Positions 16,491-49,800 are shown, counted from the first letter of the stretch. The stretch is DNA of 64,000 bases from Blastocladiella emersonii ATCC 22665 (GCA_025594325.1 JANHCV010000006.1:992001-1056000), one strand, 5' to 3'. Numbers and translations: made by a program. The notes: generated by a model from the sequence alone, not told the origin.

Positions 16491-18404
16491 TCACCGCCGG
16501 CCGGGCGCGTACATGGCCCCGCCGAGCGCCGCGTACCCGGCCCACCCGCTTGGCGCCGCGAGCGGAACCCCCGCCGCTGACGACCCTGGCGTCGGCTCGG
16601 CCGTGGGCGGCGGGTACGGCCGGTTGGACCGCGGCAGCGGCGAAAGCGGCGGCCGCGTCTCCTCAACGTACGGCGGTGGCGGAGAAGGCGGGATCGGCGC
16701 GCACCCGCATGTACACGCCCCGTGTGCCCGCGATGGAGGCGGCGGGAGCGGGCTCGGGTACGGCTGTGCGCGGGGCGGCGACCGGCGCGTTGAGGGAGCG
16801 CGCAGGTGTCCGCTGTGGCCGTGGTGCATCGGATGCGGTTGCAAGAGCGGGAGCGGTGGGAGCTGCTGCTGGTGCGGGTGTGGGTGGTGCTGGTCGGCGA
16901 GGTACTGCGGCGGGGCGGGCGGCGGCGAGTAGCGCAGCGGCGCGAGCGTGATCGGGGCGGCGGGAGCAGTATGGTGGTGGGGCAGTGCGGGAGCAGCGTG
17001 CACGGTGCTGGACGGCGTGAAGGTGGTCGTCGCCGGCGACGGGTACGAGTGGGATGCAGCATGCTGCTCGTGGTGCGGAGCGAGAGCCGCGTGGTGATGG
17101 TAGGCGTGATGGCTGATGTGGCCCGAGGCGCCCGTTGGCTGGATCCACTCCTGCGCCGACGGCGGCGAGTGCGACAGGTGCATGCCCACCATGGCGCTCG
17201 GCGAGAGTGCAGGAACAGCTGGCACCGGCGGAGCGAGGGAGGCGTGCATCGACTGCGGCGACGCCAACTCATACACGCTGCTCCCGCCGAGCGACGACGC
17301 GGGCGATCCCGAGTGGTGATGCTGCACGCCGCCGTGCGATCCCGAGTGATGGTGCTGCACGCCGCCGTGCGCCTGCACCGCCGCGGGAACCGGCGGCTCG
17401 CCAAACACGCCGGTCGGGATCGACTCGGCGGTGCACCCGCGCGAGGCAAGCTCCGGGTCGGTGGTCGGCGAGGCGAGCGGAACCGCCGAATCGGCCGAGG
17501 TCGCGTCCTCGTTGGTGTACGTGACGAGGTGGTACACGCCGCCGTCGCGCGTGGTCACGGTGATGGTGCGCTTGTACAGGCCGCCGGGGACCAGGCAGTA
17601 CTCGCCGCGGTGGCCGCGCTTGATGGCGAGCTGCGCCAGCGGGAAGCGCGACGCGACGGGCGTGGTGTTGACGAGCGCGCTGTCGTCTTCGCCGCGAGCG
17701 AGAGCGGCGAGACGCGAGGCGAGCGCCGGGAGCTCGTCGCGCGGGATGCACTCGCGGTAGACGAGGAAGGCGCCCTGTGCGCGCGACGGCGACCAGGCTA
17801 CATGAACGACGCGTCGGCGTGGCTTGGGTCAGCAAACGGTGATCCTCGCCGTGATCGCATGCGTGCGCAAGTTTCGCCTCGCCCTCGACGAACATCACCG
17901 CAGTGTTTGCAAGCAAGAAAGGCAGCGCAAGCGCGAGGTCGACGAGAGAAAATGTTGCCATCCAGGGATGCGACGAGGCGAGCCCAATCTTGTCGCTCCC
18001 CGGTTTCAGCGAGCACCGCGGGTCGGCCGTCACAAGAACAGCGAAGACCGACGCGAGACATCAAGAGCGGACCCGGGGAGGCGACGAGGGCGAGAGACGT
18101 GAAACAAGTGCGGCTATTCGCGCAACAAGAGCGGAACACGTACTGCGGCCGTCGGTCCAACGCTTGAGGCCAGCTTCGCCGTCGAGATACACGAACGTCG
18201 AGCCGGAACGGATCCCGGCACGGTGCTTGTCGGTCGGGCGCCGCTTGACACGCGGCAGGATACCGCGGCGCGTGGCCTCGATGACGAGGTGCACGTCGAT
18301 GAGCGAGTCGACGGACCCGTGGTACTATAGTTGGGCGATCGAGCGAGTCAGCAGCGGCGACAAGGGTCGATTACAGGCAGAGTGAGCGAGCGTACGGTCT
18401 CCAT
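16491..18404 (-). CDS. WOPR-family (Gti1/Pac2, Wor1/Ryp1/Mit1-like) transcription factor, ~498 aa, 3 exons (18404-18396, 18324-18144, 17797-16491)
   Basis: Spliced MET|YHGSVDSLIDVHLVIEATRRGILPRVKRRP...IRSGSTFVY...GLKRWTDGR|TWSPSRAQGAFLVYRE, then GGLYKRTITV...YHLVTY, followed by a His/Pro-rich activation-like tail. Confidence 0.92.
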
Positions 18405-20859
18405 GGTGCCGCGGATGGCCGAGACGCCGCCGAGCGGAGAGGTCATGGTTGATCGAGGTGAGGGAGGAGGGACGACGGCGGGCGGGCGAGCAGGTTCAAA
18501 TAGGCGCAAGGGTTTGGGCGAGAGCAGGGAGCAGGGAGCAGGGGGACGCCGAAGTTGGGGGCCACCGCCCTTGTGCCGTCCACCCAAGGTTCCCACTGCT
18601 CAGCGCGCACGGTGGTCGTGGTGGTGATGGTGATGGCCGCGGGCAACGGCCGGGTGCGTGCGGCCACGTCGTTGCAAAATTTGGCCATGGGCATGTGGCG
18701 GCGGCGACGGGGGCGCGCGATGACGGAAGCAGCGTGCATGTGCAACGCGAGGCACGCCAAATTAGGTGCGGCCGGTGGGCGGGCGCCCGCGGCTACGGGC
18801 CGGGCATCACGGTGGCCATCAAGATGGTGACGGCGGGGTTTCGCGTGCCGCGCGGGGGAGACATCACGAGGCACGAAGTTCAAGTCGGTGACGGACCGAG
18901 TCTGACGTGGCACGCTCGCAACGTGGTCGGGTGAGCGAGCGAGCGAGCCTGCTGCGGAAGTGCGTCAGAGTCACGGCGGCGGCGGCGGCGCCCAGGGAGT
19001 CGCCCGAGTCGGCGCAGCTCGCGGTGCTCAGGGCTGCGGGGGTGGGGGCCTTACAAGTGAGACGTTCCGCCGGCTTCGAAGTGATCCGGTCCGGTCAGGA
19101 TAAATGTGCCTTGATCCTCAACGTGGTGCGACTCAAGCGGACATGAGCGATCGCCAAGAGGGGTGGTGGCCGGGCAAGGGAGAGCAGGGTCAGACGAAGG
19201 GCGGGATGTGGGCGTCTCCGTGGGCGATGACAACAACATGGGTGAGCGCGCGCGTGCACGTCGACGTTCACGAGCGTGGCGAATTTTTCCATTCGGAGAG
19301 CCACCACGGTGGCCGGGCGCCAGCGCGCCAGCGTGCCAGCGTGTTCTTGTCGCCCACCCGCGAGCGCGGCACGAGTGTGTCGTGGCGGCTCCCGTGCGGG
19401 AGCGTGAGACGTCGAGGCGGCACACGCGTCATAACGTCGAGCGTGAGACGCCAAGGCGCGCGCGTCAAAGGAGAGAGTGATCGGAACTTGTTACGTGATC
19501 GGGACGGGTGCGTGCGCGGACGCGCGCGTGGCGCGAGACACGTTTTTGTTGCTGGTCTGGTTCCGCGGGGGGCCGAGGAGGGAGGCATGAGAGTGCCGGT
19601 TGCAGTCTGGGAGCGCGGTGTGGCGAGGTGGAGGGCAAAGTGACGGCGGGAGGCGTGTTGTGCAGGCAGTCTGTGCGACGCGTGGCGAAAGGGGCAAAAC
19701 AGAGACGCGACGCGCCAAGGCTGGCGACCCACGTGACGCGCTGTGGCGTGGGCGGCGCGTGTGGGCACGGCGGTCCAGACCGCGCGTGGGCGGGGCGGTC
19801 AAGACCGAGTGGTCGCGGCCCCCTCTCCTGCCCACGGCGGCGCGGCCCCGCCGACGTTCAGACCCGGCGCCTCGATTGCGCGCGATGGGCCGCGGCGGAC
19901 GTTCGGCCGCCGATGCGGTGATGCGGGATCAAAAACAGCCCGGGCCCCCCGCCGCGAGGCAACACGGTTGCGGCCGCCGAACTTGGTGGTGCCGGCCCTC
20001 CTTGCGCGCGGGCGGGCCGGCGGCGGGGGGCGTGCGAGCCTGGCTGGCGATGCCGCCCGCGCTCTCTCTCTCCCGCCTTGGTGCGCTCTCTCTCTCCCGC
20101 CCACGCCCGCCCCCACGCGTGCCTGAGCGCTCTCTCTCCCGCCCAACGCGTTCTTGCGCAACCGCGCCTCGCCGCTGCCCCTCTAGTGCTGGTGCCTGGT
20201 GCGTCCGCCCACACGCGCTCCATCTTCCCATACCGCACGTGTCCGTACCTGCGCGCATGCTCGCGCTGTGCCTCGTCCCGCCCGCGGACTGCCCTGCGCA
20301 GCGTGTGCGATCAGCCCGCGCCGCCGGCCACGCATCCCATCGGCTCGTGTGCGCCGTGGGAGCGGTGGCGGCGCGCTCCCACTGGTGTCGGTCGGTGCTC
20401 GCGGGTGTGCTCGCTGAGGCCAGCCGCTGTGCGCTGCGCTGTGTCCAAGCTGACGGGCGGCCCGTTGTGCTCGCTTGCCCGCTCGCTTGGCTCCTGCCCG
20501 CCGGGTCAAGGTCGTCGCGCGCGCCCGCGGCGGCAGTTGGTGGCAATCCGGGCGGCCGCGATCGGGCCCCGTCGCCTCCCGACCGCCTCGACGCGGCTCG
20601 CCCGCCCCTGTTTCGCTCGCGCCCAGACCCGCGGCTGGGCCTGGGCCTCGCTCGCCCGTACGCCTCGCTCATCATGCCTCGCCCGTCCCGTAGACGCTGC
20701 CGCGACTGCCGCGAGGCCTTCGAATTCGACCCGGTCGCCGGCGACGAAGCTCGCGCGCTCCCACTCCCACACCGCACTCTTCATCGCTTCGCTCCCTCTC
20801 CTCCCCACTGGGCGCTGATCGGCCGCCCCGCCTCGCTCTCCTCTCGAGTACCACCACCC

Positions 20860-23306
20860 ATGGACTCGCCATTTATCACCATGGACCCATCGGCCGCCTC
20901 GCCCTCTGCTGCGGCGCAGCGCCCCGCCCACGGGATGCCTCCGGGACCGGTCCCTGCCGACGCGCAGCGCCACGCGGCGACGCGTCCGCACCACCCGCAT
21001 CACAACGCCCACGCCCACGCCCACGCCCACCTCCCCACCTCATCCTCATCACCCCACCCGTCCTACCACCCCGCCGCGCACGAGCCCTCGCCGCGCCTGC
21101 CGCCCCCGCCGCCCGACCACCTCCGCTCGGGCGCCGCCGCCTACGAGACCCCGCGTCGCGCGCCGCATCACGACGTGTCCGCCGCGGCCGCCGCGCTCGA
21201 CGACGACTACTTTTGCTACAACTACCGCTACGGCGCGCCGCACGACCACCACCGCCGCGCCGCCGGTGCCGCGTCGACGCCCTCGGCGCGTCCGCCGCTG
21301 CCCGACACCTCGGCCGACGCGCACCCCGAACCACTCGAAGCCGCGACGGCTGCCAGCTCGCTCGCTACGCCGTACCCGTCGCACAGCAGCTCGCCGCACT
21401 GCCGCCCCGACGCCGACCGGCCCACGCTTCCCGCGATCGTCTCGCGCCCCGCCTCGGCGGCCCACGCGGCCCCGGCCCGCGACCTCGGCTACGACTACGA
21501 CGGCGCGCACCGCCGCACCGACAACCACCACCACGCGCCCTACGACTACGGCTACGACCACGAGCCCGTCGCCGACCGCGCGCACCGCGACCGGCCCTAC
21601 CCGCCGTCCTCGGCGCGTGCCGACTGGCATCACGCGCCCGATCACCACGACCACCACTACCATTACGACCATCCGTCGTCGTCGCGCGCGCCGCCGCGCC
21701 ACCCGCCCGCCCAGCACTACGGCCCGCCGCCGCCACCCGCGCCCGCCGCGTGGGACCCGCCCGCGCACCGCGACTACGCGTACCCGGCCGCCGCAGAGTA
21801 CCCCGACGTGCCGCCGCTGCCCCCGCCGCGCGCGCTGCCGTCGCAGCACCACCCGCACCACCACACGTACTCGCCGACCGACGCTCACGGCCACGACGCA
21901 CCAGAGTGGTACTCGTCGCACCCGCGTCACGACGGCCCGCCGCGCCCTGCCTACGGCCCCGCTGCGCGGCCGCCGCCGCCGCACCCCGCCGCTTTCAGCT
22001 ACCCCGAGCCCGCGTGGGACAGCTACGACCACTCGCCAACGGCGCCCGCCGCGCCGTACCCGCCGCCACCGCCACCCGGCCGCGGTGCGCCCGCGTTCCA
22101 CTCGCATCACCACGACTACTCGCCCGCCCGACACGACGCGCCGCCTCCGCCGCAGTACGCCGAGTACCCCGAGCAGACGCGCCCGAGCGACGGTGCCGCG
22201 TACTACGACGCCCGGCCGCCGGCAAGACGACCGGGCTCCGCGCAGCAGCGACCGCTCTCCGGCGCTCAACCCGCCCCAGCTGCGCCACCTGTCGCGGCTC
22301 CCGTCGCGCCTGCAGCTGCTCCAGCGGGGGCGGCGGTCTGCGGCGCGCACGAGGACCTCGAGGGCGACGACGCCGAGGACGACGAAGGTAGAGCCGAGGG
22401 TGGGCCCATGGTACGCGAATCTGCCTCGCATGCACCGCACCCGGCTCGCGCTAACCTTGCGTCCATGCCCACGCCCACGTGTAGCGCCGCAACTACTTTG
22501 TATTCGACCGGACCGCGTACGCGCTCATGGTCAAGGCGATCCGGTACCACAACGAGTGTCCGGGCTCGCGGTCGCAGTGCCTGCCCGAGCTCGCCACGGC
22601 GCACACGGTGGTCGGGATCCCGCGCAAGCAGTGGACGCGGCTGCGCAGCCGGCTGCGCGTGCATCCGGACCGGCCCGCGTTCCGCAACCTGTACTGGAGC
22701 GGGTGCGACCGCATCATCGCGCCCGTTGAGGACTGGGCCGACGTGATCCGCGCCGCGCACCTCGTCGAGCGCGTCACGGCCGAGAACGAGACGGCCGTCG
22801 AGCACCGGTCGCTCAAGCAGACCTTCCTCCTCCTGCGCAACCAGTACCAGACGCGCCGCTCCCGGTGCGGGCTCCCGCTCGAGCGCGTCCAGCAGTTCTG
22901 CCGCGCGTGCTCGTGCCACCCGTACGTCGCGGTCGTCGTCGCCGCCGAGGCCGCCGCGGCCAACGCGGCCGCCGTCATGGGCAGCAACGGCGGGTCTGCC
23001 GCGTCTTCGTCGTCGTCGCTGCCGGGCGTGGCCGCGCTCGCCAACGGGCACCATCCTGCGCACCCGAACCCGCACGCGCACTCGCCGCAGTACGGCCCCG
23101 GTCCCGGTCCGAGCTCCGCGTACGCGTACACGTCGCCCATCCAGCACCACCACCAGCAGCCGCAGCACGGCGACTACCACCCGCCACCACCGCCGATGGC
23201 GCACTACGGCCCGCCGCCACCGGGCGCCGGCGGGTACAGCGGGACCAACTCGCCGTCGTCGCACCCGGGTGCGCGCCCGACGCCGCACCTGGTGCGACGC
23301 AGATAG
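20860..23306 (+). CDS. Disordered Pro/His/Tyr-rich protein with an extended integrase-type H2C2 zinc module (NOL4/Ginger-like), paralogue A, ~790 aa, 2 exons
   Basis: ATG at 20860 (cccATG). Intron 22411-22484 is in phase. Domain reads YFVFDRTAYALMV...GIPRKQWTRL...RNLYW...APVEDWADVIRAAH...HRSLKQTFLLLRNQYQTRRSRCGLPLERVQQFCRACSC. Confidence 0.75.
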
Positions 23307-24731
23307 CCCCCAAGTGGGGAAGAGTTCACCTCCAACGAGTAGAATCTATCCACGTATTTTTTTTGTGTCACGGCTGATCTGGCTCCTGAGAAGCGGTGCA
23401 GCGCACAGTCGATCCGCCAGGCACAGAGTTGGAAGGCGTCGTCGGTGGCGGGAGGGGAGAGCCCAAGGCGGGAGCAGAGACGCGTTTGTCCTGCCGCGTG
23501 AACGCGAACGCGGCGCAAACGTGAACGTGGAGGTGAAACGCGGACGCGTCGGGGCCAGCTGGCGTGCATTTCTCGTCTGTGCTCGCCCTCCCTTCCACCT
23601 TGATCTTTCGCTCAAGCGGGCCCGTCGCTGTCTCAAACTGGCTGCATTCCGTCCAGCTGGACGCGTGGGCGGTGCGGCCAGCGGTCATCCGCTGGCGGCC
23701 GTCGCGCGGCTCATCAACGCGCGCCGCTTGCGCGCCCGCCCGCCCCCCTGACGCGCTGCGCGCGGCTCGCTTCACCTTCCAACTAAGGTCCGCGTGTCCC
23801 GAGTGACGCGGCAGGGCATCATCCGCTGTGCTCGGGCCGCGTTGCAATGACGGGGGTCCGCGGTCGGGCGGTGCGACTCCGCGTCAAAGTCGACTCGGGC
23901 GACACCCGCTCGATCACGCCGCACGCCTGCCCGCTCACGCAAGGCCCTGGGCGCGAGTTCGGGCAAGGTTTGAGTTGTGTCCGCCGAGCAGCCTTCCCCA
24001 CCTCACACCGTGGACCGCCGCCGTGGATCTGCTTGCGTTCAATCGGGACTCACGACCGCAATCGCGCTTGCACTCCTGCTCCACGGCCGCCGCCGTCGCC
24101 CCCCCCCCCTCTCCCCCGACGCAGCGAACACTCGGTCTAGCTCGCCGCGCGCGATTTGCGTCACTCCCCTCCCCCTCCGCCGCGCCGTTCACGCCGCTGA
24201 CGCGCCACGCGGCTCGCGTCGGGTCTCGCATCGCATCGCCCGCGATCGACTCTGCGACGGCGGTTTCACCTCGGCATCAGCCCTCCGCCCCGCCGTGCCG
24301 AACGGTCGGGACTGCTCGGACGGACGCCATCGCCGCGCTCGCCCCGCCCGCACCCGCGCCCGCGTCGCGTCCACGCTCTCCCGGATCCCCGCCCACTTCC
24401 CTGCTGCCCCCGTGCGCCCGCTCTCCGCCGCTCCGAGCACTTGGCTGTACGCATACACTGACACGAGCTGAGCCGCCGCGCGAACGAGGAGACTGCTCGC
24501 ATGCACCACCCCCATCGCGGCCCCCACCACCACTTCGCCTCCGCCGCCCGCTGTCCGCCGCCGCACTGCGCGCGACCGAAACGAACCGAACCGAACCGCA
24601 CACACGTACTGACCCTCCCGCGCGCCGTCGCATCCGACCCTTTCTCTCCCTTTCCCCCGCTTCGCCACCCGGCATCCCACCCTCTAGCGCGCGTGCCCCG
24701 CCCGCTCGCCACGGGCCTGCGATCGCGCACC

Positions 24732-27537
24732 ATGAATCGACCACCACCGCCGCCTCCTCCACCACTGCCGCCGCAGCGCGACGGCGACGACGCGAGCAGC
24801 AGCAGCACCACCACTGCCGCCGGCCGGAAACGGCCGCGATCGCCGCGCTCGACACCACCGCCACCGTCTGCGCCTCAACCGGCGCCCGGACGGGCACCTC
24901 CTGCGCGACACGGGCACGGCGAGGAACGCGATCTTCCACGGCCGCCCGCTTCCGCTTCCGCCGATCCTCGGATTGACACCGACCCCCGTGGCCGCGCCGA
25001 ACGTGAGCTTCCACCACTTCCGCCCCGCCACACCTGCGCCCTTCCGCAGCCGCTGCCGCCCGCCACGCTGGCCGTGCCGCGACACGTCGTTGCTGCCGGT
25101 GGTGGTGGTGGCCGCGACGATCATGCGTCGCCGTCCCCGTCAACGAGTACATCTGCTGCTGCTCACCCGCACTCGCGCTCTCGCCAGTACCACGATCCAC
25201 CCGTCTCGCGCGCAGACTCGAGCGCGATGGGTGCAGACGCTGACGAGGGTGGCGAGTCGGGTGCCGTCCACGTCCGCGCGCGCGCGCCGGGCGCCGACCC
25301 CGACCCCGACCCCGACCGCGGCCAACTGATGATCGCGCCGCCGACAACAACCGACGCCCACCTGAGCCAACCCCCGGCCCGCTCCCACCCGCACCCTCCG
25401 CCTTATCCGCCGCCGCCGGCCACTCGATCGCCGCACGCCGCCCAACATCATGCACCGCCGTCGTGGCCACCGAATCACGACGACGCGTACCGCTACCCGC
25501 AGCAGCAGCACGACGCATCGTATCCCGACGGCGACCGTGATCGTGATCGCGACGATGCCTGCCGGTACTCGCCGCGCTCGCACCACTACCCGCCGCCCGC
25601 CGCGACGGCCATGGCGTACCACCACCACCACGGCGATCCGCGGCCGCGGCATCCCGATCCGCGCGCTGCCGCCGCCGGCTACGACGCGTCGTACTACGAC
25701 CCCGGGTACCCGCCGCCGACCGCGCGTCACCACGCCGGCTCGCGGCCCATGGACCCCGAATACGGCGACTATTACGCGCCCGACGAGCACGGGCCACCGC
25801 CGCCACCAGGCGCGTGGGGTTCGGGACCGCCGCCGCCGCGTGCGGGCGGGTACGAGCCGCGGTGGGACGGATACGGCCACGGCGGCCACGGCGGCCAGGG
25901 CTACGGCCATCCCGACTACCGCTACGCGCCGCCGCGGCCATACGCACACCCCCACCCCCACGCGCCGTACCCGTATCCGCACCGGCATCACCATCGTTCG
26001 GATCCGTGGCACGACGAGTACGACGGCTATGAGTACGGCTACGAGTACGACGGCCGGCCGCGGCCTCCACCGCCGCCGCCGCCGCCGCGGTCCTACGACC
26101 CGTACGCGTATCATCACCCGCATCACGCGTACCCGCCTCCGCCTCCACCTCAGCAGCCGATGCATCGAGGGCCGCCGCGTGCAGGACCGCCGCCGCCCAT
26201 GAACGGCAGCGTGGCCGGGAGCGACGGGTCCGCGCCGCAGCACCAGCACCAGCACGCGTACAACTACGACTACGCGTCGGGTCCGCCTCCGCCGCAGCTC
26301 GACCGCGAGTACGACGCGTATCCGCCGCCGCCGGTACCCGGTCAATACCCCGACACCGAGTACGGCGGCTACCCAGCACGACGACCGCCACCGCCGTCTG
26401 CGCACGCGCCGTACCACTACCCCGACCCGCACTACGACGCGTACGAGCACCCGCCCGCGCCAGTTCCACCACCTCCCCCGCCTCCGCCGCCGCCGGCGTT
26501 GGGCAACGCAGGCCCTCCGCGGTCGCGCAGCGCGAGCTCGGCGGTCCAGTCCCCGCTCGCGGCCCGGCTGCGGCCGCGGAACCCGCCGCCGCAAGCAAGC
26601 GATCGGCCGTCCGTTTCGGCTTCCTCGACGACGCCCGCTGTCGCGAACGGTGGCGATGCGACCGCGAGCACGACGACGACGACGGCGGGCGCGGGCGGAA
26701 CGCGCCGGCGCATCTATTTTGTCTTCAACCGCACGACGTACGGGCTCATGGTCATGTTCCTGCGGCCCGAGTCCGCGCCGCCCGCACCCGTGTCGGGTGC
26801 CGGCGGCTCGACGGGCGAGCTCGATCGTACGTTTCTTCGCCGTCCCCGCATCGACCCATCAACTCACTCTTCGCGCGCGATCTAGCTACCTCCCTCGCGG
26901 CCTTCCGCGCGCACCTCGCCGAGCGCCGCGAGCGCGCGACCGCGCACGTCCAGGCGGGCATCTCGCGGCGGCAGTGGACGCGGCTCGCGCGCCGGCTCGA
27001 GCTCGACCCCGACGCGCCCTCGGGCCGCAACCTCGTGTGGAAGGGTACCCAGCAGGCCGTGGTTCCCGAGGAGGACTGGCCCGCGGTCATCTGCGAGGCG
27101 CACGTCGACAACGAGGACGGCGGGCGGCATCGCGGGGCTAAGGATACCGCGGCGGTGGTACGTTTTCGTGTACGTGCGGTGTGACGACGGCGTGAAGACT
27201 GACCTCGCCGATGTAGCTCCGCCAGCGGTTCCAGACGCGCCGGTCGCGGTGCGGGATCAACCTCGACCTGGTCCCGGACATTGTCGCCGCGTGCGGGTGC
27301 GGCGCGACCAACAGCGCGAGCACCGCGAGCGCCGCGGCGTCGTCGGGCTCGGCTTCCGCTACCGCCACTGCAGCGGCCTCAGCAGCTGCGGCAGACGACG
27401 ATGAGGACGACAAGTCGGATCCCGAGGACGAGGACGACGACGACGACGACGAGGGCGACGCGGGGTCGGCCCGCACCGCAGATCGGCCGGCGACGCGTCA
27501 GGGCGGCGCGGGCAACAAGCGTAGGCGAGTCCGATGA
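24732..27537 (+). CDS. Paralogue B of the H2C2-module protein, ~895 aa, 3 exons (24732-26826, 26886-27157, 27217-27537), with acidic tail and C-terminal NLS-like KRRRVR
   Basis: Two 59-nt GT-AG introns restore the frame. Domain reads YFVFNRTTYGLMV...GISRRQWTRL...RNLVW...VPEEDWPAVICEAH...HRGAKDTAAVLRQRFQTRRSRCGINLDLVPDIVAACGC. Confidence 0.78.
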
Positions 27538-27688: not shown

Positions 27689-29283
27689 TTAGTTCTCGCG
27701 GCCCATCTTCTTGTCCAACCGGCAAATGGGGTTGTTCTGGATCATCTCGAGGTCGCACTTGTGGCCGAGCAGCTCGCGGATGTTGTCGATGCCGTACTTG
27801 ATCATGGTGGGTCGCTCGAGCGAGAGACCCCACGCGATGACGCGCACGTTCTCGGGGAGGCCGAGCGGACGCAGCATCTCGGGGCGGAACATGCCCGAGT
27901 TGCCGATCTCGACCCACTTGCCGAGCCCGGCGTGGTACGAGAAGATCTCCATGGACGGCTCCGTGTACGGATTGTAGGCGGGCTTGAAGCGCACGTTGGT
28001 GACGCCCATCTTCTGGCAGAAGACGTTGATGAACCCGATCAGGTCGCCGAGCGTCATGCCGACGTCCGCGATCACGCCCTCGACCTGGTGGAACTCGGCC
28101 AGATGCGTCGCGTCGACCGTCTCGTTGCGGAACACGCGGTCGATGGAGAAGAGCTTGGCGGGCTTGAAGCCGCCCGGCTGGTTGGCCAGCTGGTACAGCA
28201 TGTGCGACGACACGGCCGTGGTGTGGGTGCGCAGCAGCAGCTTCTCGGCCTCGGCCTCCTTCCAGTCGTAGCCGTACCCGATCGACCCGAACCCGCCGTG
28301 GCTGTGCACCTGCTTGACCGCCTCCATGGTCGCGCGCGGGTACCGGTCCGAGGTCGCGGGCGACTTGAGGAAGAAGGTGTCGTGCATGTCGCGCGCCGGG
28401 TGCTGCTGCGGCTGGAACAGCGCGTCAAAGTTCCAGAACGACGACTCGACGTAGCGGTTGGCGGGCATCTCCTCGAAACTGTTGTTGTGCGGGCGGGCGA
28501 GTGTGAGTGGGAGACGAGAACCGGTGCGCAGGCAGAGGGTACGGACCCCATCTCGAAGAAGATCTGGCGGAACTCCTCGCGCACCTTCATGAGCGGGTGG
28601 AGGTGGCCGCCGGCGGGCTCCTGGCCGAGGGCGTCAAAGTTGTAGCGCTTGAAGTCGAGGTTCTTCCACGCGCCCGAGGTGATCATGTCGAGGGTGAGGT
28701 CGGTGGCCTGCTTGACGAGGTCGGTGGCGAACTTGGCGGCCTTGTCGACGGCGTAGTAGGTGACCTTGACCTTGTCGCACAGCTTGCGCTTCTTGAGCTC
28801 GGCCAGCGTCTTGGCGTTCTTGTGAGTCGCCGAGTCGCGGATCTCGACCAGGTCGGCCTGCGTCACGTCGTCGACCGACTCGACGAGGCGCACGAGGCGG
28901 CCCGACGCGCCGGCCTTGCCGATCCACTTGTTCTTGAAGGCCTTGCCCTGGCCGATCTTGGCCACGTCGGCGCCGACGGCGGCCGTCAGGTCGGCGATCG
29001 AGATGCCCTCGTCGCCCGCGGGGACCGCCGCGAACACCTTGGCCTCGTGCGACCCGTGGGCGGCAATCTCGTCGCCCTCGGCCGTCAGCACCCAGCGCTC
29101 CTCCTCGAGCGGCGTGAAGGTGATCATCTCGCGGCGCTCCAGCGATGACAGCGCGCCGTGCAGCACCTGGCCGTCGACGAGCTGGTCCTCGTACTTGAGC
29201 CCCGCCGTCGTCGCGATCCGGCCGTCCTGGTCCAGCGTCGCCAGGATGTGCAGCGCGAGTTCCTCCGAGGTCGGCGCGGTCAT
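27689..29283 (-). CDS. FARSA: Cytosolic phenylalanyl-tRNA synthetase alpha subunit, ~508 aa, 2 exons
   Basis: [22 protein letters not shown]|[67 protein letters not shown]. Intron 28479-28546. Confidence 0.97.
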
Positions 29284-40920: not shown

Positions 40921-41448
40921 ACGCCCGCCCGGTGGCCAAGCGTGTGTGTACCATGTAGCCCTGTAATAACACTCCCTCCCTTTTGCCTCACCCTCGTCGA
41001 GCAGAGCTCGCTGAGCCACCCATGGTGGCGGCCACGCGTCGTGTTTGAGAGGAGGCGACCTAGCTCGGAAGCTCGGGGACAGAATTTGCCCGCCAGGCCG
41101 AGCGCGTCCCCAAAAACCCAAGTTTCCGTCACGTTTCCGCATTTCCGCGACCTGACCCGGCCGAGCGGCTGGCCGAGCGGCGCCACGGCAGAGGCGCGTC
41201 TCGCGACGTGCGGCTGCCGATCCGCCTGCTGCCTTCCCCCTTGCCCGCCCTGCTCCCACGGACCCTCGCACTCGCCCTTCCTCTCTCTCCCGCCCGGCCC
41301 CAACAGCAGTTGCGGCAGCAGCGTCCCTGCACTCATTCCCCTCACGCATTGCACATGTATGTCCGCCTGCTCTCGGCTCGCCCGACGACGATGAATGCTC
41401 GCTTACGATGACCCCGGCGAGCCTAGCCCCCACCAACCAGCAGCTACA

Positions 41449-43826: not shown

Positions 43827-46800
43827 ATGCCACCACCACCGCCACCACCACCGCCCCCTCCGGCGCCATCCGGCAACGGCGGCGCGCGCGGCCTCGGCGG
43901 CGACCCCCGCCGCCCCTCGATGCGCGCAGTCCCCGACCGGCCGCCACAACTGCCACACGCGGGCTCCTCGGCGTCATCCAGCGCAACCGGCTCCGAAGAT
44001 TCACTCAACGGCAGCACGCGCCCGGGCGGCCGCCAGCACCTCACCATCAACCCGGCGTGGGACACGGGTCCGGGCGCGACGCTCGCGCCCGCCTCGCTCG
44101 TGGGGCCGGGGCTTTCCTCGCTCTCGCGCAACGGCAGCCTCAACTCGCTCGTCATCACCCCCAAGGCCGTGGGACCAACGCGCGAGGCCGCGCGCCGCAA
44201 CTCGGTCTTCAACATGTCGGCCGCGCCATCGCGCGCGGGCAGTCTGACGAACGTCGGACCCGCCGCGGCCGCGTCGCCGTCGGACGGCCCGTCGCCGTTC
44301 ACCTCGAACTCGGCGCTCCCGCCGATCGCGGGCACACGGCCAGCGGATCGCTCGCGCGCTCGCGCATTATGGGAGCTCATTCGGACGTTTGTGGTGCGCT
44401 TTCTGGGCACTCGTCTTCATAGTAAGGTGGCCGCTAACGAGCCTCGTATCGTAGTCCCGTCGCTTCTTCACCACGTTCATGACGGGCACCGCCGTCAACG
44501 ACGGCAACGCCTACTACACGCAAATGCAGACGACGTGGGCCGCCCTGCGCGAGCAGCAGCGGCGCGTCCTGTCCCGCATCGACTCGGCGCGCGGCAGCAG
44601 CAGCAGCAGCAGCGACGACGATTCGCCGCTCTTTGACTCGTTCGGCTTCGGCGACGAGAGCGGCAGCGACTACGACGAAGAAGACAACGGACCTGGACAC
44701 GATCTCCGCCCATCGACGAGTACCGGGTGGGACCGGTCCAGCAACGCGCTCGCGGGCGGACCGCGCGCCGCGACGTCGTCCGGCAGCAGTTCCGGCGGGC
44801 TCTCGTCGACCGCGTCCGATCTCCTCGCCGGCATGAGCCTTGACCGGCTCCGCGACCCGGCGCCGTTCGACCTCGCCAACACGCTCGCCCTCATCATCCA
44901 GGGCCTCCAGCCGCACGCGCAGGCGTCGACCAACGGCAACGACTGGGAGGGCGGCCGCGGGCCCGCGACCGACGCCAACGGGAACCCCGTCCCCGCTGCC
45001 AACGACGCGTCCGGCGGCCCACCCGGTGCGGCCAGCGCCGCATCCTCGCGCACGTCCGAGCTCTACTTTGCCCAGCAGCACCACCTGACCGCGTGGCGGA
45101 TCATGGTCCTGTCGCTGCGCATGAGCGAATCGGCGCATCGCCGCCTTGGCCTCGCCGCGCTCGCGGCCGTGGCCCCCGCGCTGCAGCAGACGTGCATCGA
45201 CAACGACACGCGCGACATGCTCGCCGAGGCGCTGCTCGCCGTCACGGTCGGCGACGAGCGGCTGACCAACCGCCTGCACGCGATCCACGTCCTCGGCGAC
45301 CTGTACGGCCTGTACCTGCGCACGTCCGAGGACGACGCGGCCGCGGTGCTCGCGTCCGCGACCCACGGCGCCACGGGCGGCGGCGGGAGTATCTCGGCGC
45401 GCGTGTTCCAGGCGCTCATCAAGATGCTCCATGAGATCCAGTGCCGCGAGCGACGCATGCTCGAGGCCGATCTCGGCGCTGAGCTTGCTTCGCCGGCCGC
45501 GGGTGCGCGGCCGAGTACCGTAGCGGCGACCGCGGCGGCCGCGGCCAAGCTCAACCGCGAGCAGCTCGTCGTAAAAATGTACCTCTTCTCGGCGCTCGGA
45601 AAGTTCCTCAAGTCCGAGATCGAGCCCGAGTGGATCAAGGCCACGGTCCTCTACATGATCTGGGCCGAGCTCGAGTACATCTTCCCCACGTTCCGCCACC
45701 TCGACGAGTATCTCGGCATGATGGAGGTGATCATGCGCATCTTGACCTCGGTACAATCTCTCGCTTGTGGCGCGAGTGGATCGGCGTGCTGACACTGGCC
45801 ACGGCAATACTTGTAGATCCAGGGCAACGAGACCAACCGGACCTTCATGGGCGCCATGTTCAAGTCGCGCATCCAGCCGCTCATGATCATCAACCGCAAG
45901 AAGCCGTCGGCGACCGACCCGCCGCCCGCCCTCGCCGAGGCCCTGCAGCGGCTCGCCGTCCAGTTCACGGCACTCTGGCTGCCCATCACGCGCGACGGCG
46001 CCAACGCGTCGGCGTGGACCATGCTCCTCGAGGGCATGCGGTACCTCCCCGACCCGACCGACTCGACTGTCGCTACCGACCGGTCCCTCCTCAACGCGCG
46101 CCTCCGCGACGAGGCCTCGCGCAGCGTCACCCGCACCCGCGTCCTCTGGCAGCTCTTGCAGATGCCCAGCCTGACGTGCCGCCTCCAGCGCGTCCCCGGC
46201 GCGCCGCGCGGCTGGTTCGCGACTCCCGACGAGTCAGTCGAGATGGACCAGTCGGACTTGGGTGGCGCGGGCGACGTTGCGGCCGCGGCGTCAACGGGTG
46301 ATTCGGCCGCACGCGCGACGCGGACCGTCAGCACCTGTAACATGCCGCTCACGTCGGGCATCGCCGTGTACCTTCCCGACGGCGGCACGCCGACCTCGGG
46401 CACCGCGGCGCGCCACGCGCTGCACTCGGACACCATCGTCTACATCACGCGCCCGCTGCCGCCGCTGCCGGGCGTCCCGACCAACGCCACGACGCAGCCG
46501 CCCATCTTCATGGACCCGAGCTGGGCATCCAAGGTCGCCACGTCGGCCGCCGGACAGTACGAGGCCGCCGAGCGCACCGGCCGCGTGCCGTGCCTCCCGG
46601 CCGGCTACACGTACTCGCCGGCGCCGCTCCCGGCTGCCACGGCGGGCTCGGCCGCGGTCGCGGTCCCGCAGGGCAAGGTGCTCGCGTCGCCGCGCCCGAC
46701 CGAGGGCCGCGCGGGGATCCGCATAGGCGTCGGCATGAACGAGCTCCCGCCCCCGCGCAAGGTCCCGTTCGGGTTCGTCACGCGCCCGATCAACGTCGAC

Positions 46801-49800
46801 GTCAGCGCGGTCCCCGCCGACGGCTCGACCGGCGACGGCAGCGTCGGCGGCGCGCCCGGCGTCATCCGCCGCCCGAGCATGGCCATCACGCTGTCCAAGG
46901 CCAACCTCGCCCTGCAGCGCACGCGGTCGCGCGTGCAGACGGTCGAGGAAGAGGACGAGGATTCGGGGAACCACGGCAGCGGCGGAGATGATGACGACGA
47001 GGACCACGCCGCCGAGTACGGCGAGGGGTACACGGCCGAACGCATCCCCGCCGTGTTCCCTGTCGCGTCCGGCACGCTCATGTCGCAGACCCCCGACACC
47101 GAGTTTCTCCTGCACGCGCCCGTGATCCTCGACATCGTCGAGCCGTCCCGCGCGCGCCGCGTCGCCGCCCGCATCGTCTCCATCAACAAGTGCTTCGAGC
47201 CCGTCGCCGTCAACAACGCCGGGTACCTCAGCCCCGGCGCGCGATTCAACCTCCATATCCGCCCGCGCAAGGCCAACCGCGGCGTGTCCAGCGAGTCGCG
47301 CCGTGCGAGCGTCATGCCCCCGGAAGCGGCGCTCTCGCGCGGTGCCAGCGCCACGTCGCTCGCCGGATCGCGCGGCAACCTCGCCGCGAGCCGTGGGTCG
47401 CTCTCGTCGGCCGCCGCCGCGCAGGCCATGTTCGGGACCGCTGTCGCCGCGAGCGACCCGCCGTCGCTCGGCGCGTCCTTCTCGAGCCGCGGCGGTGGCG
47501 GCGGTGGCGGGAACGTGCTCGACGTCAGCTCGCGGCTGTCGCTCGCGCAGGACCTCGACGCCATGGGCGAGGACGAGGAGGAGTGGATCACGGTGCAGCT
47601 GCAGGTCGAGGAGGACACGAGCGGGTCCGTCGAGGTGCTCCGCAGCTCGCAGTCGTCGCTCGTCCCGCCGCCCGTCGTCTCGTGCGGCCTGACGCAGGAC
47701 GGGACCGCCTTCTTCACGCCGCCGTGCAACCTGTCGCCGCTGCCCGTCGGGTACACGCGCCACGGCGAGGCGTTCTACGCCATGCCGCCGCCGCTCCGCC
47801 CGATCCCGGCCGGGCTGCTCGCCGACGGGAAGCGGTACTTCCACGCGGGCGCGGGCGCCGGCGTCGCGTGGGACTCGACGGCGGCCACGCCGCACGGGCT
47901 CGCCGGGTTCGACTACCGCGGGCAGCCCTACTTTGTGCCCAAGGGGTGCAAGATCCCGGCGCCGTCGGGGTACACGGCGTACGGCGTGCCGTACTACGAC
48001 ATCTCGACGATCCTGCTCGAGCGCGGGATTCTCATGGAGAACCGCGAGTACGCGCCGTCGGCCACGCTCAACTGGTCGCACCCGCTCAAGATGATCCAGA
48101 ACCAGACCACGGTCGCCGACTCGGACGCGGTGTGGCAGCCTGAGCCCGGCCACGAGTTTGCCGAGCCGCGCGGGATCCAGTTCATCCGCGAGCTCGAGGA
48201 CCTCGCGTACCTCCACCCGCCGGGCATCAAGACGGCGCTCGAGCCGGGCAGCCTCCACTTCCAGTCCGTGACGGGCGTCGTGACGCGGCCGTGCATCCTC
48301 AAGTTCCGCGCACTCCGCGGCGACCACAGCGAGCGCGACTACTTCTTCACCGTCGAGCCCATGGACGTGTTCTCGGTCGACGTGTTCCACGTCCGCCTGC
48401 AGGGCGAGGGTATGGTCCAGGTCAAGGTCTCGTGCCACTCGTCGCGCATCAAGTTCCAGCACGTCGAGGGCAGCCTGTCACTCATCGACGAGACGGGCCG
48501 CCGCCTCGTGTCGTGCAAGCTGACCGGCACGCGCAAGTCGTTTGTCCGTGTCTACCCGCTCTCGGTCCACTGCGGCTGGGTCATGCCCAACGCGTCGTCG
48601 ACGTTCAGCGTGACGTGCGAGAACATCAGCAACTCGCTCATCCACCTCGGGTTTCGCCGCCCGTCCAACTCGTTCTACATGGCCGAGGACACGCTCAAGC
48701 TGCAGAGCAAGGAGGCCAAGTCCATCAACGTCACGTTCGAGCCGCAGGTCGTCGGCGCGTACGACTCGATGATCCAGGTCGAGGCGCCCGGCGGCGAGAC
48801 CATCACGGTCCACGTCGCGGGCGTGTGCGGCGTCCCGCTCGCGCTGCACACGGAGAGCCCGCACGACTCGGCGCTCGGCCCCGACGTGCTCGCCCGCGAG
48901 CGGTCCTCGTTCGTCTCGCGCGTCTTCAAGCTGCTCGAGAGCGGCGAGTCGGTGCTCGCCGTCACGGAGCGGTTCCTGCACGGCAAGGACGAGCAGGACC
49001 TGTTCTCGTCGCTGCTGTACGCCATGGACCCCGTCGGCCGCCGCCGCAATAACCTGTGCATCGATTTCGGCCTGCTCGAGCTGCCCAAGTCGGACGGATC
49101 CGGCGGCGTGCTTCCCTCGGCCTCGCTCTGCCTCACGCTCTTCAACGTCTCGACCGAGCCGCTCACTTGCTCGCTCTTCTCGACGTCGACCGAGCTCGAG
49201 TTCGACCACCTCGTCCGCATCGCCCCGCACAAGGCCAACTCGGTGCGCATCGAGGTGCGCCCGCGGGTCACCGGCGAGTTCTGCGCCGTCATTGCCCTGA
49301 CGTGCCCAGGATTCGCGACCATCCCGTGTCTCGTCCGCGGATACGTCGGCTGCCCGGTCTTCATCGCCGCGCTCCCCTCAGTGTGGATGCCGCCGGCAGA
49401 GCCCAAGGGCATCGCCAGCGTCTCGCTGCCCGTCATCAACATGTCCAACGCGCCGGTCGAGGCGACCATCGAGATCACGAGCGCGTGCGGCCGCTTCCGC
49501 GTCGCCGGCGTGCCCATGCTCCCGGCCGGGATCGCGTCTACGCCGCTGCCCGCCATCACGAGCTCGTCCTCGACTGGAGCCGAGAGTGGGTCGACGGTCG
49601 TCGCCACGGTCCGCGTCGCGTCGTACAGCGTGCAGAACGTCGAGTTCGAGTGCACCGACATTGGCGAGTCGCTCGAGCGCGCGTTCGTGAACCTGTCCGT
49701 CGGCGCGCTGCGGTCCACGTCCATCACGCTGCTCTGCATGCCCATGTGGTTGGGACTCGTCAAGCAGGATCTCGAGTCGCTCGTGCACTGGATGCACCAA

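What the first reader, a model, noticed from the sequence alone, without database searches (positions are those of the whole stretch)
20860..27537. Tandem pair of spliced paralogues carrying an extended integrase-type H2C2 zinc module with no catalytic core: candidate domesticated-transposon regulator family
Seen: after manual splicing, two adjacent same-strand genes share a ~150-aa block: YFVF(D/N)RT(A/T)Y(A/G)LMV ... ATAH..xGI(P/S)R(K/R)QWTRLxxRL ... RNLxWxG ... PxEDWxxVIxxAH-x(9-14)-HRxxKxTxxxLRxx(Y/F)QTRRSRCGxxLxxVxxxxxACxC. The rest of each protein is an unalignable Pro/His/Tyr-rich disordered region of 500-650 aa. B also has an acidic tail and KRRRVR. Intron positions differ (A before the domain, B two inside it), implying an old duplication under selection. 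No DDE core, reverse transcriptase, LTR or TIR is visible. Established: H-x-H...C-x(1-2)-C is the zinc-binding N-terminal domain of retroviral/gypsy/Ginger-type integrases, and the animal nuclear protein NOL4 keeps a similar extended module alone (recalled layout: KY..IV..L - W - LY - VEDF.DII..MH - H.GQK.T - LPRE.V..F...C..C). Inference: these are catalytically dead, integrase-derived nuclear regulators in an early-diverging fungus, with a family-specific QTRRSRCG insertion. The B half of the domain is invisible in the ORF track.
Basis: partly seen in the sequence, partly recalled or inferred. Interest (0 to 1): 0.8.

Follow-up and report, generated by a model that had tools for sequence, protein, structure and literature searches.

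The report
Tandem fungal zinc-module gene pair
Two neighbouring genes of the zoosporic fungus Blastocladiella emersonii encode long disordered proteins that share one compact, probably zinc-binding 147-residue module; the module belongs to an undescribed family found across that fungal phylum and at the front of Mutator-like transposases in ferns, while its proposed kinship to retroviral-type integrases has only weak support.

Summary
Two same-strand genes (A about 20860-23306, B about 24732-27537) share a collinear module of about 147 aa. It is uninterrupted in A and split by two introns in B (BLASTP E 3e-22, 6e-8, 1e-7). The window is Blastocladiella emersonii ATCC 22665.

An exhaustive search found 40 representative relatives. 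Of 30 traced, 28 are Blastocladiomycota "hypothetical proteins" and 2 are fern proteins. In ferns the module is fused to a FAR1-like DNA-binding domain and a MULE transposase core, and it is multicopy there. Allomyces and Catenaria also carry tandem copies.

Two His and two Cys, three Trp and an RRSR-G loop are nearly invariant. AlphaFold gives a confident fold (pLDDT 94).

The integrase link is only suggestive:
- Pfam Integrase_H2C2 is the only recurrent hit, in 2 of 40 members, and below threshold.
- The best-probability Foldseek hits are Ty3 and foamy-virus integrase N-termini, at non-significant E-values.
- The His/Cys half searched alone finds no integrase.
- No NOL4 link appeared.

I see no mobile-element features around A or B, and purifying selection is strong in Allomyces. 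Best reading: host regulators built on a new zinc module shared with transposases. The direction of exchange is unresolved.

The parts
20860..23306 (+). Gene A. Start is at 20860 or the next ATG at 20881. The ORF's own stop is at 23304-23306. The GenBank gene range is 20881-23342.
   Evidence: GenBank range and 790-aa product.
20860..22410 (+). A exon 1: 517-aa Pro/Ala/His/Tyr-rich low-complexity region with no Pfam match.
22411..22484 (+). A intron: 74 nt, phase 0, GTACGC...GCTAAC...GTAG.
   Evidence: Consistent with the GenBank product length (inference).
22485..22925 (+). A module: 147 aa in one exon. Putative zinc ligands are H92 (22758-22760), H107 (22803-22805), C142 (22908-22910) and C144 (22914-22916). 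The RRSR-G loop is residues 124-129.
   Evidence: AlphaFold pLDDT 94.3.
22926..23306 (+). A C-terminal tail: 126 aa, disordered, rich in Pro, Ala, Gly, Ser and His; ends at the stop codon.
24732..27537 (+). Gene B. Start is at 24732 or the upstream ATG at 24501. Stop is TGA at 27535-27537. Three exons.
24732..26826 (+). B exon 1: Pro-rich low-complexity region. Its last ~40 codons (26706-26826) hold the first helix of the module.
26827..26885 (+). B intron 1: 59 nt, phase 1, GTACGT...CTAG. Seen only in B.
   Evidence: Collinearity with A.
26886..27157 (+). B exon 2: the middle of the module, with codons starting at 26888. Putative ligands are His at 27101-27103 and His at 27128-27130. This exon is not in the ORF list.
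27158..27216 (+). B intron 2: 59 nt, phase 0, GTACGT...CTGAC...GTAG. Its position is shared with Allomyces gene 1 and both Catenaria copies.
27217..27537 (+). B exon 3: the end of the module (27217-27300, with the RRSR-G loop and Cys at 27292-27294 and 27298-27300), then an Ala/Asp-rich acidic tail and a C-terminal basic cluster.

Best explanation
A and B are two adjacent members of a multigene family confined, among fungi seen here, to Blastocladiomycota, with at least six members in B. emersonii.

Each protein joins a long Pro/His/Tyr-rich disordered region to one compact module of about 147 aa, made of helices and beta-hairpins. The module is most likely held together by one zinc ion bound by two invariant His and two invariant Cys. 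It has an Arg/Trp-rich surface and an invariant RRSR-G loop.

The same module forms the N-terminus of multicopy Mutator-like transposases in ferns, ahead of their FAR1-type DNA-binding domain and MULE core. I therefore read it as an accessory nucleic-acid-binding or assembly domain shared between transposases and host genes.

In the fungus the transposase part is absent and the genes behave as conserved host genes. Their most likely role is as nuclear DNA- or chromatin-binding regulators: the module would target the protein and the low-complexity regions would recruit partners.

Shown: the paralogy, the family and its distribution, the residue conservation, the confident fold, the fern fusion, and the absence of a catalytic core.

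Inferred: zinc binding, nucleic-acid binding, nuclear regulatory function, and a transposon origin of the fungal genes.
For: - Paralogy and splice models.
- Source genome: 23,603 nt identical to B. emersonii ATCC 22665, GCA_025594325.1.
- Family size: 40 representatives at E<=1e-3 out of 1.84 billion proteins. Of 30 traced, 28 come from Allomyces, Catenaria, Blastocladiella, Sorochytrium and Coelomomyces, and 2 from the fern Adiantum.
- Conservation: H92 in 39/39 rows, H107 in 38/39, C142 in 40/40, C144 in 38/38; W50, W71, W84, RRSR and G129 are nearly invariant. The set also holds with fern rows included.
- Fold: AlphaFold2 mean pLDDT 94.3, pTM 0.85.
- Fern fusion: P0034 has the module, a FAR1/AFT-like region and PF10551 MULE at E 6.9e-9. 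hhalign of the fungal against the fern module gives probability 98.5%, E 3.8e-15 over 131 columns.
- Fern copy number: at least 17 clusters at 76-99% identity on different Adiantum contigs.
- More ferns: further copies turned up, including one from Christella dentata reads. In two copies fetched from other sources (P0063, P0064) the module and the FAR1-like part lie in one uninterrupted ORF.
- Host-gene behaviour: tandem same-strand copies also occur in Allomyces arbusculus (three), A. macrogynus and Catenaria (two).
- Selection: the module is 103/103 aa identical with 27 of 309 nt changed between two Allomyces species, dN/dS about 0.03.
- Context: no long repeats, TIR or LTR around A and B. 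The neighbours are ordinary genes: PheRS alpha, a HYDIN-like gene, an acetyl-CoA synthetase-like gene and a Gti1/Pac2 gene.
Against: - No function has been tested for any member.
- Zinc binding is inferred from conservation only. I could not read the model's coordinates, so ligand geometry is unchecked.
- No significant match to any known DNA-binding fold or Pfam family.
- The flanks of the tandem clusters are not syntenic between genera.
- Expression and splicing are unconfirmed by RNA data.
- The fern link could equally mean that a transposon captured a host-type domain.
Confidence: 0.6

Rival explanations
1. One reading: the module is the N-terminal extension plus His2Cys2 zinc domain of a gypsy- or retroviral-type integrase that lost its catalytic core and was domesticated as a nuclear regulator.
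For: - Integrase_H2C2 (PF17921) is the only Pfam family hit by more than one of 40 members, with best E 0.028.
- In P0026 the match covers residues 54-89 against profile positions 2-34 of 59. That is the stretch with both His.
- The full-module Foldseek hits with the highest probabilities are Ty3 integrase 7q5b (0.54-0.69, TMq 0.38-0.44) and the prototype foamy virus intasome integrase (0.35-0.51, 80 columns, 20-22% identity).
- In BFVD the best hits are foamy-virus Pol fragments, with probabilities of 0.51-0.72, plus one unnamed 104-aa entry at 0.93.
- The module's two halves (about 77 and 70 aa) match the sizes reported for the extension domain and zinc region of Ty3-type integrases (PMC6101501).
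- His2Cys2 zinc-dependent folding of integrase N-terminal domains is established (PMC11054761).
Against: - No hit reaches significance. The best Pfam score is 14.8 bits against a 25.5-bit cut-off, and Foldseek E-values run from 0.07 to about 2.
- No window piece hits Pfam at all.
- Sequence and profile searches of the PDB find no integrase.
- The His/Cys half modelled alone (pLDDT 82) retrieves no integrase, and all probabilities are below 0.16.
- The two His are separated by a beta-hairpin of 8-14 residues, and by more than 100 in one Catenaria member.
- Most members have Cys-x-Cys, not Cys-x2-Cys.
- The only proven transposase partner is a MULE core, not an rve/DDE integrase core.
Confidence: 0.3
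2. Reverse direction: the module is an old host domain of zoosporic fungi or their relatives, and a fern Mutator-like element captured it. On this view A and B were never transposon genes.
For: - The fungal family is deep and diverse, at 30-55% identity between paralogues across five genera. The fern copies found form a much tighter group.
- MULEs are known to capture host gene fragments; Pack-MULEs are cited in PMC10799480.
- No blastoclad member carries a transposase core.
Against: - In ferns the module is in frame, conserved at all key residues, and kept in diverged copies from at least two fern families. That is typical of a working transposase domain rather than a passenger fragment.
- A route from a fungal phylum to ferns would need horizontal transfer.
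- The weak integrase resemblance also points to a mobile-element ancestry.
Confidence: 0.25
3. The module is chiefly a protein-protein or RNA-binding and oligomerisation unit. It would then act as a scaffold for condensates formed by the low-complexity regions, rather than as a DNA-targeting domain.
For: - Integrase N-terminal domains also drive multimerisation (established knowledge; review PMC11054761).
- The Pro/His/Tyr-rich regions make up most of each protein.
- The invariant RRSR loop could serve RNA contact or phosphorylation (inference).
Against: - In ferns the module sits at the N-terminus of a transposase, next to a DNA-binding domain.
- The module is 15% Arg and has conserved Trp residues.
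- None of this is direct evidence either way.
Confidence: 0.2
4. A and B are parts of an active or decayed mobile element, or are spurious ORFs in GC-rich DNA.
For: - The window is about 70% GC and full of long chance ORFs on both strands.
- The module occurs in a transposase in ferns.
Against: - Only two copies in 64 kb, at 47% identity.
- No terminal or long repeats.
- No transposase, integrase or reverse-transcriptase domain.
- Conserved relatives in five genera, canonical introns with one shared position, and dN/dS about 0.03.
- Gene A is annotated in GenBank.
Confidence: 0.03

Closest known systems
N-terminal region of retroelement integrases: extension domain plus His2Cys2 zinc domain (Pfam PF17921 Integrase_H2C2; Ty3 integrase in PDB 7q5b; prototype foamy virus integrase)
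   Same: - The order of four conserved ligands: His, His, Cys, Cys.
- A helical zinc region of about 70 aa preceded by an extension of about 75 aa.
- These are the best-probability structural neighbours and the only recurrent Pfam hit.
   Different: - Scores are below every significance threshold.
- A beta-hairpin lies between the two His.
- Most members have Cys-x-Cys.
- A family-specific RRSR-G loop lies between the last two helices.
- No rve/DDE core follows.
- The zinc half searched alone finds no integrase.
Mutator-like (MULE) transposases with a FAR1-type DNA-binding domain, and their domesticated plant derivatives FHY3/FAR1 (the latter from established knowledge)
   Same: The module is demonstrably homologous to the N-terminal domain of multicopy fern MULE transposases. 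As with FHY3/FAR1, the fungal genes would be host regulators sharing a transposase domain.
   Different: - A and B lack both the FAR1 domain and the MULE core.
- What they share is an extra N-terminal domain that is not in any Pfam MULE-related model.
- The host lineage is a fungal phylum, not plants.
Integrase-derived host genes of animals (GIN1, KRBA2, NYNRIN; named from my own knowledge) and NOL4
   Same: The concept only: a host gene that keeps a mobile-element domain.
   Different: None of these came back as a hit in any search with the window's protein or the family profile. No paper in the library links NOL4 to integrase. I wrote out no letters for them.

Membership tests
Integrase zinc-binding domain (Pfam PF17921 Integrase_H2C2 / integrase N-terminal His2Cys2 domain) | Scores above the Pfam gathering threshold (25.5 bits) | tested here: not met
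   No hit at E<=10 for any A or B piece. 2 of 40 relatives hit it, best 14.8 bits, E 0.028-0.031.
Integrase zinc-binding domain (Pfam PF17921 Integrase_H2C2 / integrase N-terminal His2Cys2 domain) | Four conserved zinc ligands in the order His, His, Cys, Cys | tested here: met
   H92 39/39, H107 38/39, C142 40/40, C144 38/38. Also kept in the fern copies.
Integrase zinc-binding domain (Pfam PF17921 Integrase_H2C2 / integrase N-terminal His2Cys2 domain) | Canonical ligand spacing: a short His-His spacer and Cys-x2-Cys. The canonical values are from my own knowledge and were not checked here. | tested here: not met
   - The His-His spacer is 14 residues in A and 8 in B, with an insertion of more than 100 columns in one Catenaria member.
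- His to Cys is 34 residues.
- Most members have Cys-x-Cys.
Integrase zinc-binding domain (Pfam PF17921 Integrase_H2C2 / integrase N-terminal His2Cys2 domain) | Fold superposable on solved integrase N-terminal domains | tested here: inconclusive
   Full module: Ty3 and PFV integrases have the best probabilities (0.35-0.69) but E-values of 0.25-2 and TMq of 0.26-0.44. The His/Cys half alone finds no integrase among its hits.
Integrase zinc-binding domain (Pfam PF17921 Integrase_H2C2 / integrase N-terminal His2Cys2 domain) | Followed by an rve/DDE catalytic core (full integrases) | tested here: not met
   No rve or other catalytic domain in A, B or the 40 relatives.
Integrase zinc-binding domain (Pfam PF17921 Integrase_H2C2 / integrase N-terminal His2Cys2 domain) | Binds one zinc ion through the four residues | not testable with these tools
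   Model coordinates are not readable here, and there are no metal data.
NOL4 / NOL4L | Detectable sequence or profile similarity, so that it comes back as a named hit | tested here: not met
   All 30 traced hits of the exhaustive search are blastoclad or fern proteins. The profile word search adds only fern-type proteins. No paper links NOL4 with integrase.
Mutator-like (MULE) transposase | MULE catalytic domain (PF10551) | tested here: not met
   Absent from A, B and all fungal relatives. Present in fern P0034 at E 6.9e-9.
Mutator-like (MULE) transposase | FAR1/WRKY-type DNA-binding domain | tested here: not met
   Absent in the fungal proteins. Weakly detected in the fern proteins.
Mutator-like (MULE) transposase | Shares the N-terminal module of the fern MULE subfamily | tested here: met
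   hhalign probability 98.5%, E 3.8e-15, 131 columns.
Domesticated transposase-derived host gene | Homology to a domain of a mobile-element protein | tested here: met
Domesticated transposase-derived host gene | No terminal repeats, no catalytic core, low copy number | tested here: met
   within the 64-kb window only. The whole genome was not surveyed.
Domesticated transposase-derived host gene | Orthologues kept across species under purifying selection | tested here: met
   Relatives in five genera. Tandem clusters in three genera. dN/dS about 0.03 between two Allomyces species. The flanks are not syntenic.
Domesticated transposase-derived host gene | Direction of descent from element to host | tested here: inconclusive
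   No blastoclad transposon with the module was found, and fern elements could have captured it. No rooted phylogeny is possible with the present sample.

The most novel reading that the evidence does not exclude
The module is a previously unrecognised zinc-dependent DNA-end or DNA-target-binding domain of eukaryotic transposases. It would be distantly related to the extension-plus-zinc region of retroelement integrases, would be used today by fern Mutator-like elements, and would have been domesticated once, early in Blastocladiomycota, into a radiating family of lineage-specific regulators. That would tie together the N-termini of two transposase superfamilies, and would show a fungal phylum and ferns sharing one domain.
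Probability: 0.3. Interest if true: 0.7.

Novelty: new variant of a known kind. Interest (0 to 1): 0.55.

Why it matters
- It defines a new, confidently folded protein domain with no Pfam model. That gives a handle on dozens of "hypothetical proteins" in Blastocladiomycota.
- It points to candidate lineage-specific regulators in B. emersonii, a classical model for zoospore development.
- It shows a domain shared between host genes of a fungal phylum and active-looking Mutator-like transposons of ferns. This is a concrete case for studying how transposase accessory domains move between elements and hosts.
- If the weak integrase resemblance is confirmed, it would extend the known range of the integrase N-terminal fold.

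Tried and rejected
**Searches that found nothing useful**
- Pfam scan of every A and B piece: nothing at E<=10 except low-complexity noise on B's acidic tail.
- PDB sequence searches with A's module, with two family profiles and with P0026: only low-complexity or chance hits.
- Word search with A exon 2: no hits within its length range.
- tRNA and Rfam scans of the window: nothing.
- Repeat search: only the paralogous block and GC-rich low-complexity matches.
- Synteny of the flanks between the window and Allomyces: none beyond the module genes. A first unfiltered tblastx run was mostly noise.
- Guessing which members hit Integrase_H2C2 cost one wasted Pfam call.
- DNA of the Adiantum element could not be fetched because the file is too large. 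Its terminal repeats are therefore undescribed.
- An exact look-up of the 709-aa ORF at 41395 found nothing.

B's module was analysed as three exon pieces, so there is no structure model of B and no full-length query of either protein.

2. The script (neighbour-joining tree) kept only alignment columns matched to A's residues 35-113. For relatives with insertions this joined non-adjacent stretches.
3. The A-versus-B codon statistic joined the aligned blocks on either side of a gap.

The finding likens the module to retroviral-type integrases, so slips 2 and 3 should not have been done. No joined sequence was printed and nothing was deleted. I rely on neither result. The Allomyces dN/dS used contiguous stretches and stands.

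Full report
**1. What is in the sequence**

The window is about 70% GC. On the + strand a long frame-1 ORF carries a 517-aa Pro/Ala/His/Tyr-rich region (20860-22410). After a 74-nt GT...AG interval, a frame-3 exon (22485-23306) follows. Its first 147 residues are not low-complexity.

A second long ORF, from 24501 or 24732 to 26826, ends with a short match to the start of that block. Two further pieces, 26886-27157 (codons starting at 26888) and 27217-27537, continue it.

BLASTP of A's block against the three B pieces gives collinear matches:
- E 1e-7 for the end of B exon 1.
- E 3e-22 for B exon 2.
- E 6e-8 for B exon 3.

A tblastn of the block against the whole window finds only these two copies. 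The disordered regions of A and B do not align (E 1.7). B ends in an Ala/Asp-rich acidic tail and a basic cluster.

**2. Splice models**

All three introns begin with GTACG, end in YAG and contain CTNAC-like branch sites.

B intron 2 is a phase-0 intron between module residues 116 and 117. Introns lie at exactly this position in Allomyces arbusculus gene 1 and in both Catenaria copies. It is therefore an intron that relatives share.

B intron 1 is unique to B. It rests on its splice signals and on collinearity with A.

For A, the GenBank record gives a 790-aa product over window 20881-23342. By arithmetic this fits the same 74-nt intron plus a 15-nt GT...AG gap over the natural stop. This is my inference; I could not see the annotated exons.

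B was handled exon by exon, so B has no structure model and neither protein was queried at full length.

**3. Source and context**

A 1200-aa ORF of the window is an exact product in Blastocladiella emersonii ATCC 22665 (GCA_025594325.1, contig JANHCV010000006.1). 23,603 nt of that record are identical to the window.

The neighbours are ordinary host genes:
- A Gti1/Pac2 gene.
- An alpha/beta-hydrolase gene.
- A Kelch/muskelin gene.
- PheRS alpha, convergent with B.
- An acetyl-CoA-synthetase-like gene.
- A HYDIN-like flagellar ORF of 4052 aa.

There are no tRNAs, no Rfam matches and no terminal or long repeats.

**4. Relatives**

The word search with A exon 2 was blank, and Pfam was blank. 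I therefore ran the exhaustive search. It found 40 representatives at E<=1e-3, with best identity 47-54%.

Of 30 traced, 28 are "hypothetical proteins" of Blastocladiomycota: Allomyces arbusculus, A. macrogynus, A. javanicus, Catenaria anguillulae, Blastocladiella emersonii, B. britannica, Sorochytrium milnesiophthora and Coelomomyces lativittatus. Two are from the fern Adiantum nelumboides. Ten were not traced.

Most fungal members have the same build: a long low-complexity region and then the module near the C-terminus. B. emersonii has at least six members: A, B, P0006, P0008, P0012 and P0020.

Same-strand tandem copies also occur elsewhere:
- Allomyces arbusculus has three.
- A. macrogynus has them too, with fragmented gene models.
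- Catenaria has two.

P0008 in B. emersonii is solitary. The flanks are not syntenic.

Between two Allomyces species, 103 of 103 module residues are identical while 27 of 309 nt differ, giving dN/dS of about 0.03.

**5. The module**

Across 40 rows the following are invariant or nearly so: H92, H107, C142, C144, W50, W71, W84, P80, R124-R127 and G129. The Cys at position 128 is not conserved (29 of 38 rows).

AlphaFold2 with this alignment gives mean pLDDT 94.3 and pTM 0.85. The model has six helices of at least four residues and two beta-hairpins. One hairpin lies between the two His, and the Cys pair lies just after the last helix. I could not read the coordinates, so convergence of the four residues is untested.

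**6. The transposon link**

Fern protein P0034 carries the module at residues 55-183, then a FAR1/AFT-like region, then a MULE transposase domain (PF10551, E 6.9e-9).

hhalign of the fungal module alignment against the fern alignment gives probability 98.5%, E 3.8e-15 over 131 columns, with all key residues kept.

In Adiantum the protein is multicopy: at least 17 clusters at 76-99% identity on different contigs.

A profile word search added more copies. One comes from sequencing run SRR17418362, which is the fern Christella dentata (PMC9879191). Another comes from an ENA assembly. In both, the module and the FAR1-like part lie in one uninterrupted ORF.

So the module is a genuine N-terminal domain of a fern Mutator-like transposase lineage.

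**7. The integrase hypothesis**

Evidence for it is concordant but weak:
- Integrase_H2C2 is the only Pfam family hit by more than one member: 2 of 40, best E 0.028, 14.8 bits against a 25.5-bit cut-off. The match covers the stretch with both His.
- The full-module Foldseek hits with the best probabilities are Ty3 integrase (7q5b; probability 0.54-0.69, TMq 0.38-0.44) and prototype foamy virus integrase (0.35-0.51). In BFVD the best are foamy-virus Pol fragments (0.51-0.72), plus one unnamed 104-aa entry at 0.93. All of these have E-values between 0.07 and about 2.
- The sizes of the two halves match the extension domain and zinc region described for Ty3-type integrases (PMC6101501).

Evidence against it:
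- Nothing reaches significance.
- Sequence and profile searches of the PDB find no integrase.
- The His/Cys half modelled alone (pLDDT 82) retrieves no integrase.
- The ligand spacing is atypical.

I rate this reading at about 0.3. It is compatible with, but not required by, the best explanation.

NOL4 never came back as a hit, and no paper in the library links it to integrase. I wrote out no letters for it.

**8. Mechanism proposed**

- Shown: a conserved, compact, Arg/Trp-rich module with four invariant metal-ligand-type residues. It is joined to long low-complexity regions in the fungal proteins, and to a DNA-binding domain plus a transposase core in ferns.
- Inferred: one structural zinc ion; nucleic-acid binding or assembly on DNA; a nuclear regulatory role in the fungus, with the disordered regions as interaction or activation parts; and exchange of the module between a transposase and host genes, in an unresolved direction.

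**9. Novelty**

The family has no Pfam model and no names. A fungal screen for transposon co-option did not include Blastocladiomycota in its tree and relied on Pfam domains (PMC10799480). I file this as a new variant of a known kind, namely a host gene family sharing a transposase accessory domain. The integrase affinity remains open.

**10. Declared slips and limits**

These are listed under Tried and rejected: one motif recalled from memory in my reasoning, and two script statistics that joined non-adjacent stretches. I rely on none of them. The age of the A/B duplication is therefore left open. A lacks the shared intron that B keeps, and A is about as similar to the Allomyces tandem genes (45-54%) as it is to B (47%).

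Unexplained: the exhaustive search returned no self-hit for the annotated 790-aa product of A.

Noticed in passing
window 23292-23342: The GenBank gene range for A (20881-23342, 790 aa) fits only if a 15-nt GT...AG gap removes the ORF's natural stop at 23304-23306 and adds 11 codons. This is probably an annotation artefact. It is inferred from arithmetic; the exon table was not seen.
   Followed up: partly
window 45847-58005 (+): A single uninterrupted ORF of 4052 aa with HYDIN/CFAP65/Cep192/ASH Ig-like domains. It is a flagellar central-pair type protein, which fits a zoosporic fungus.
   Followed up: partly
window 27689-29283 (-): The PheRS alpha gene (tRNA-synt_2d, E 9e-80) has at least one intron and converges on gene B. 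Only about 150 nt separate the two stop codons.
   Followed up: partly
window 16491-18446 (-): An annotated Gti1/Pac2-family gene lies about 2.4 kb upstream of A. This family includes fungal developmental switch regulators.
   Followed up: no
L001 10001-18226 (Allomyces arbusculus) and L006 (A. macrogynus): Allomyces has three consecutive same-strand module genes. The third was found only by tblastn; its 637-aa product has no Pfam hit on record. In A. macrogynus the models are fragmented, and P0004 (154 aa) is only the C-terminal piece of one gene.
   Followed up: partly
P0005 (Catenaria anguillulae), L002 10001-12182: An insertion of more than 100 residues, acidic and Ala/Gly-rich, sits between the two conserved His (113 alignment columns). 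The hairpin between the ligands therefore tolerates very large insertions.
   Followed up: no
P0006 and P0008 (B. emersonii, different contigs): These two have nearly identical modules. P0006 is only 284 aa, so it is a recent duplicate or a truncated gene model.
   Followed up: no
window 21049-22440 (-), 24277-26598 (-), 25140-26594 (-): Very long antisense ORFs of 463-773 aa overlie the low-complexity exons of A and B. They have Arg/Val/Gly-rich translations and look like by-products of GC-rich repetitive coding sequence.
   Followed up: no
(whole-library search): No self-hit was returned, although gene A is annotated in GenBank as a 790-aa product. Either the library lacks it or it withholds the window's own proteins.
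   Followed up: no
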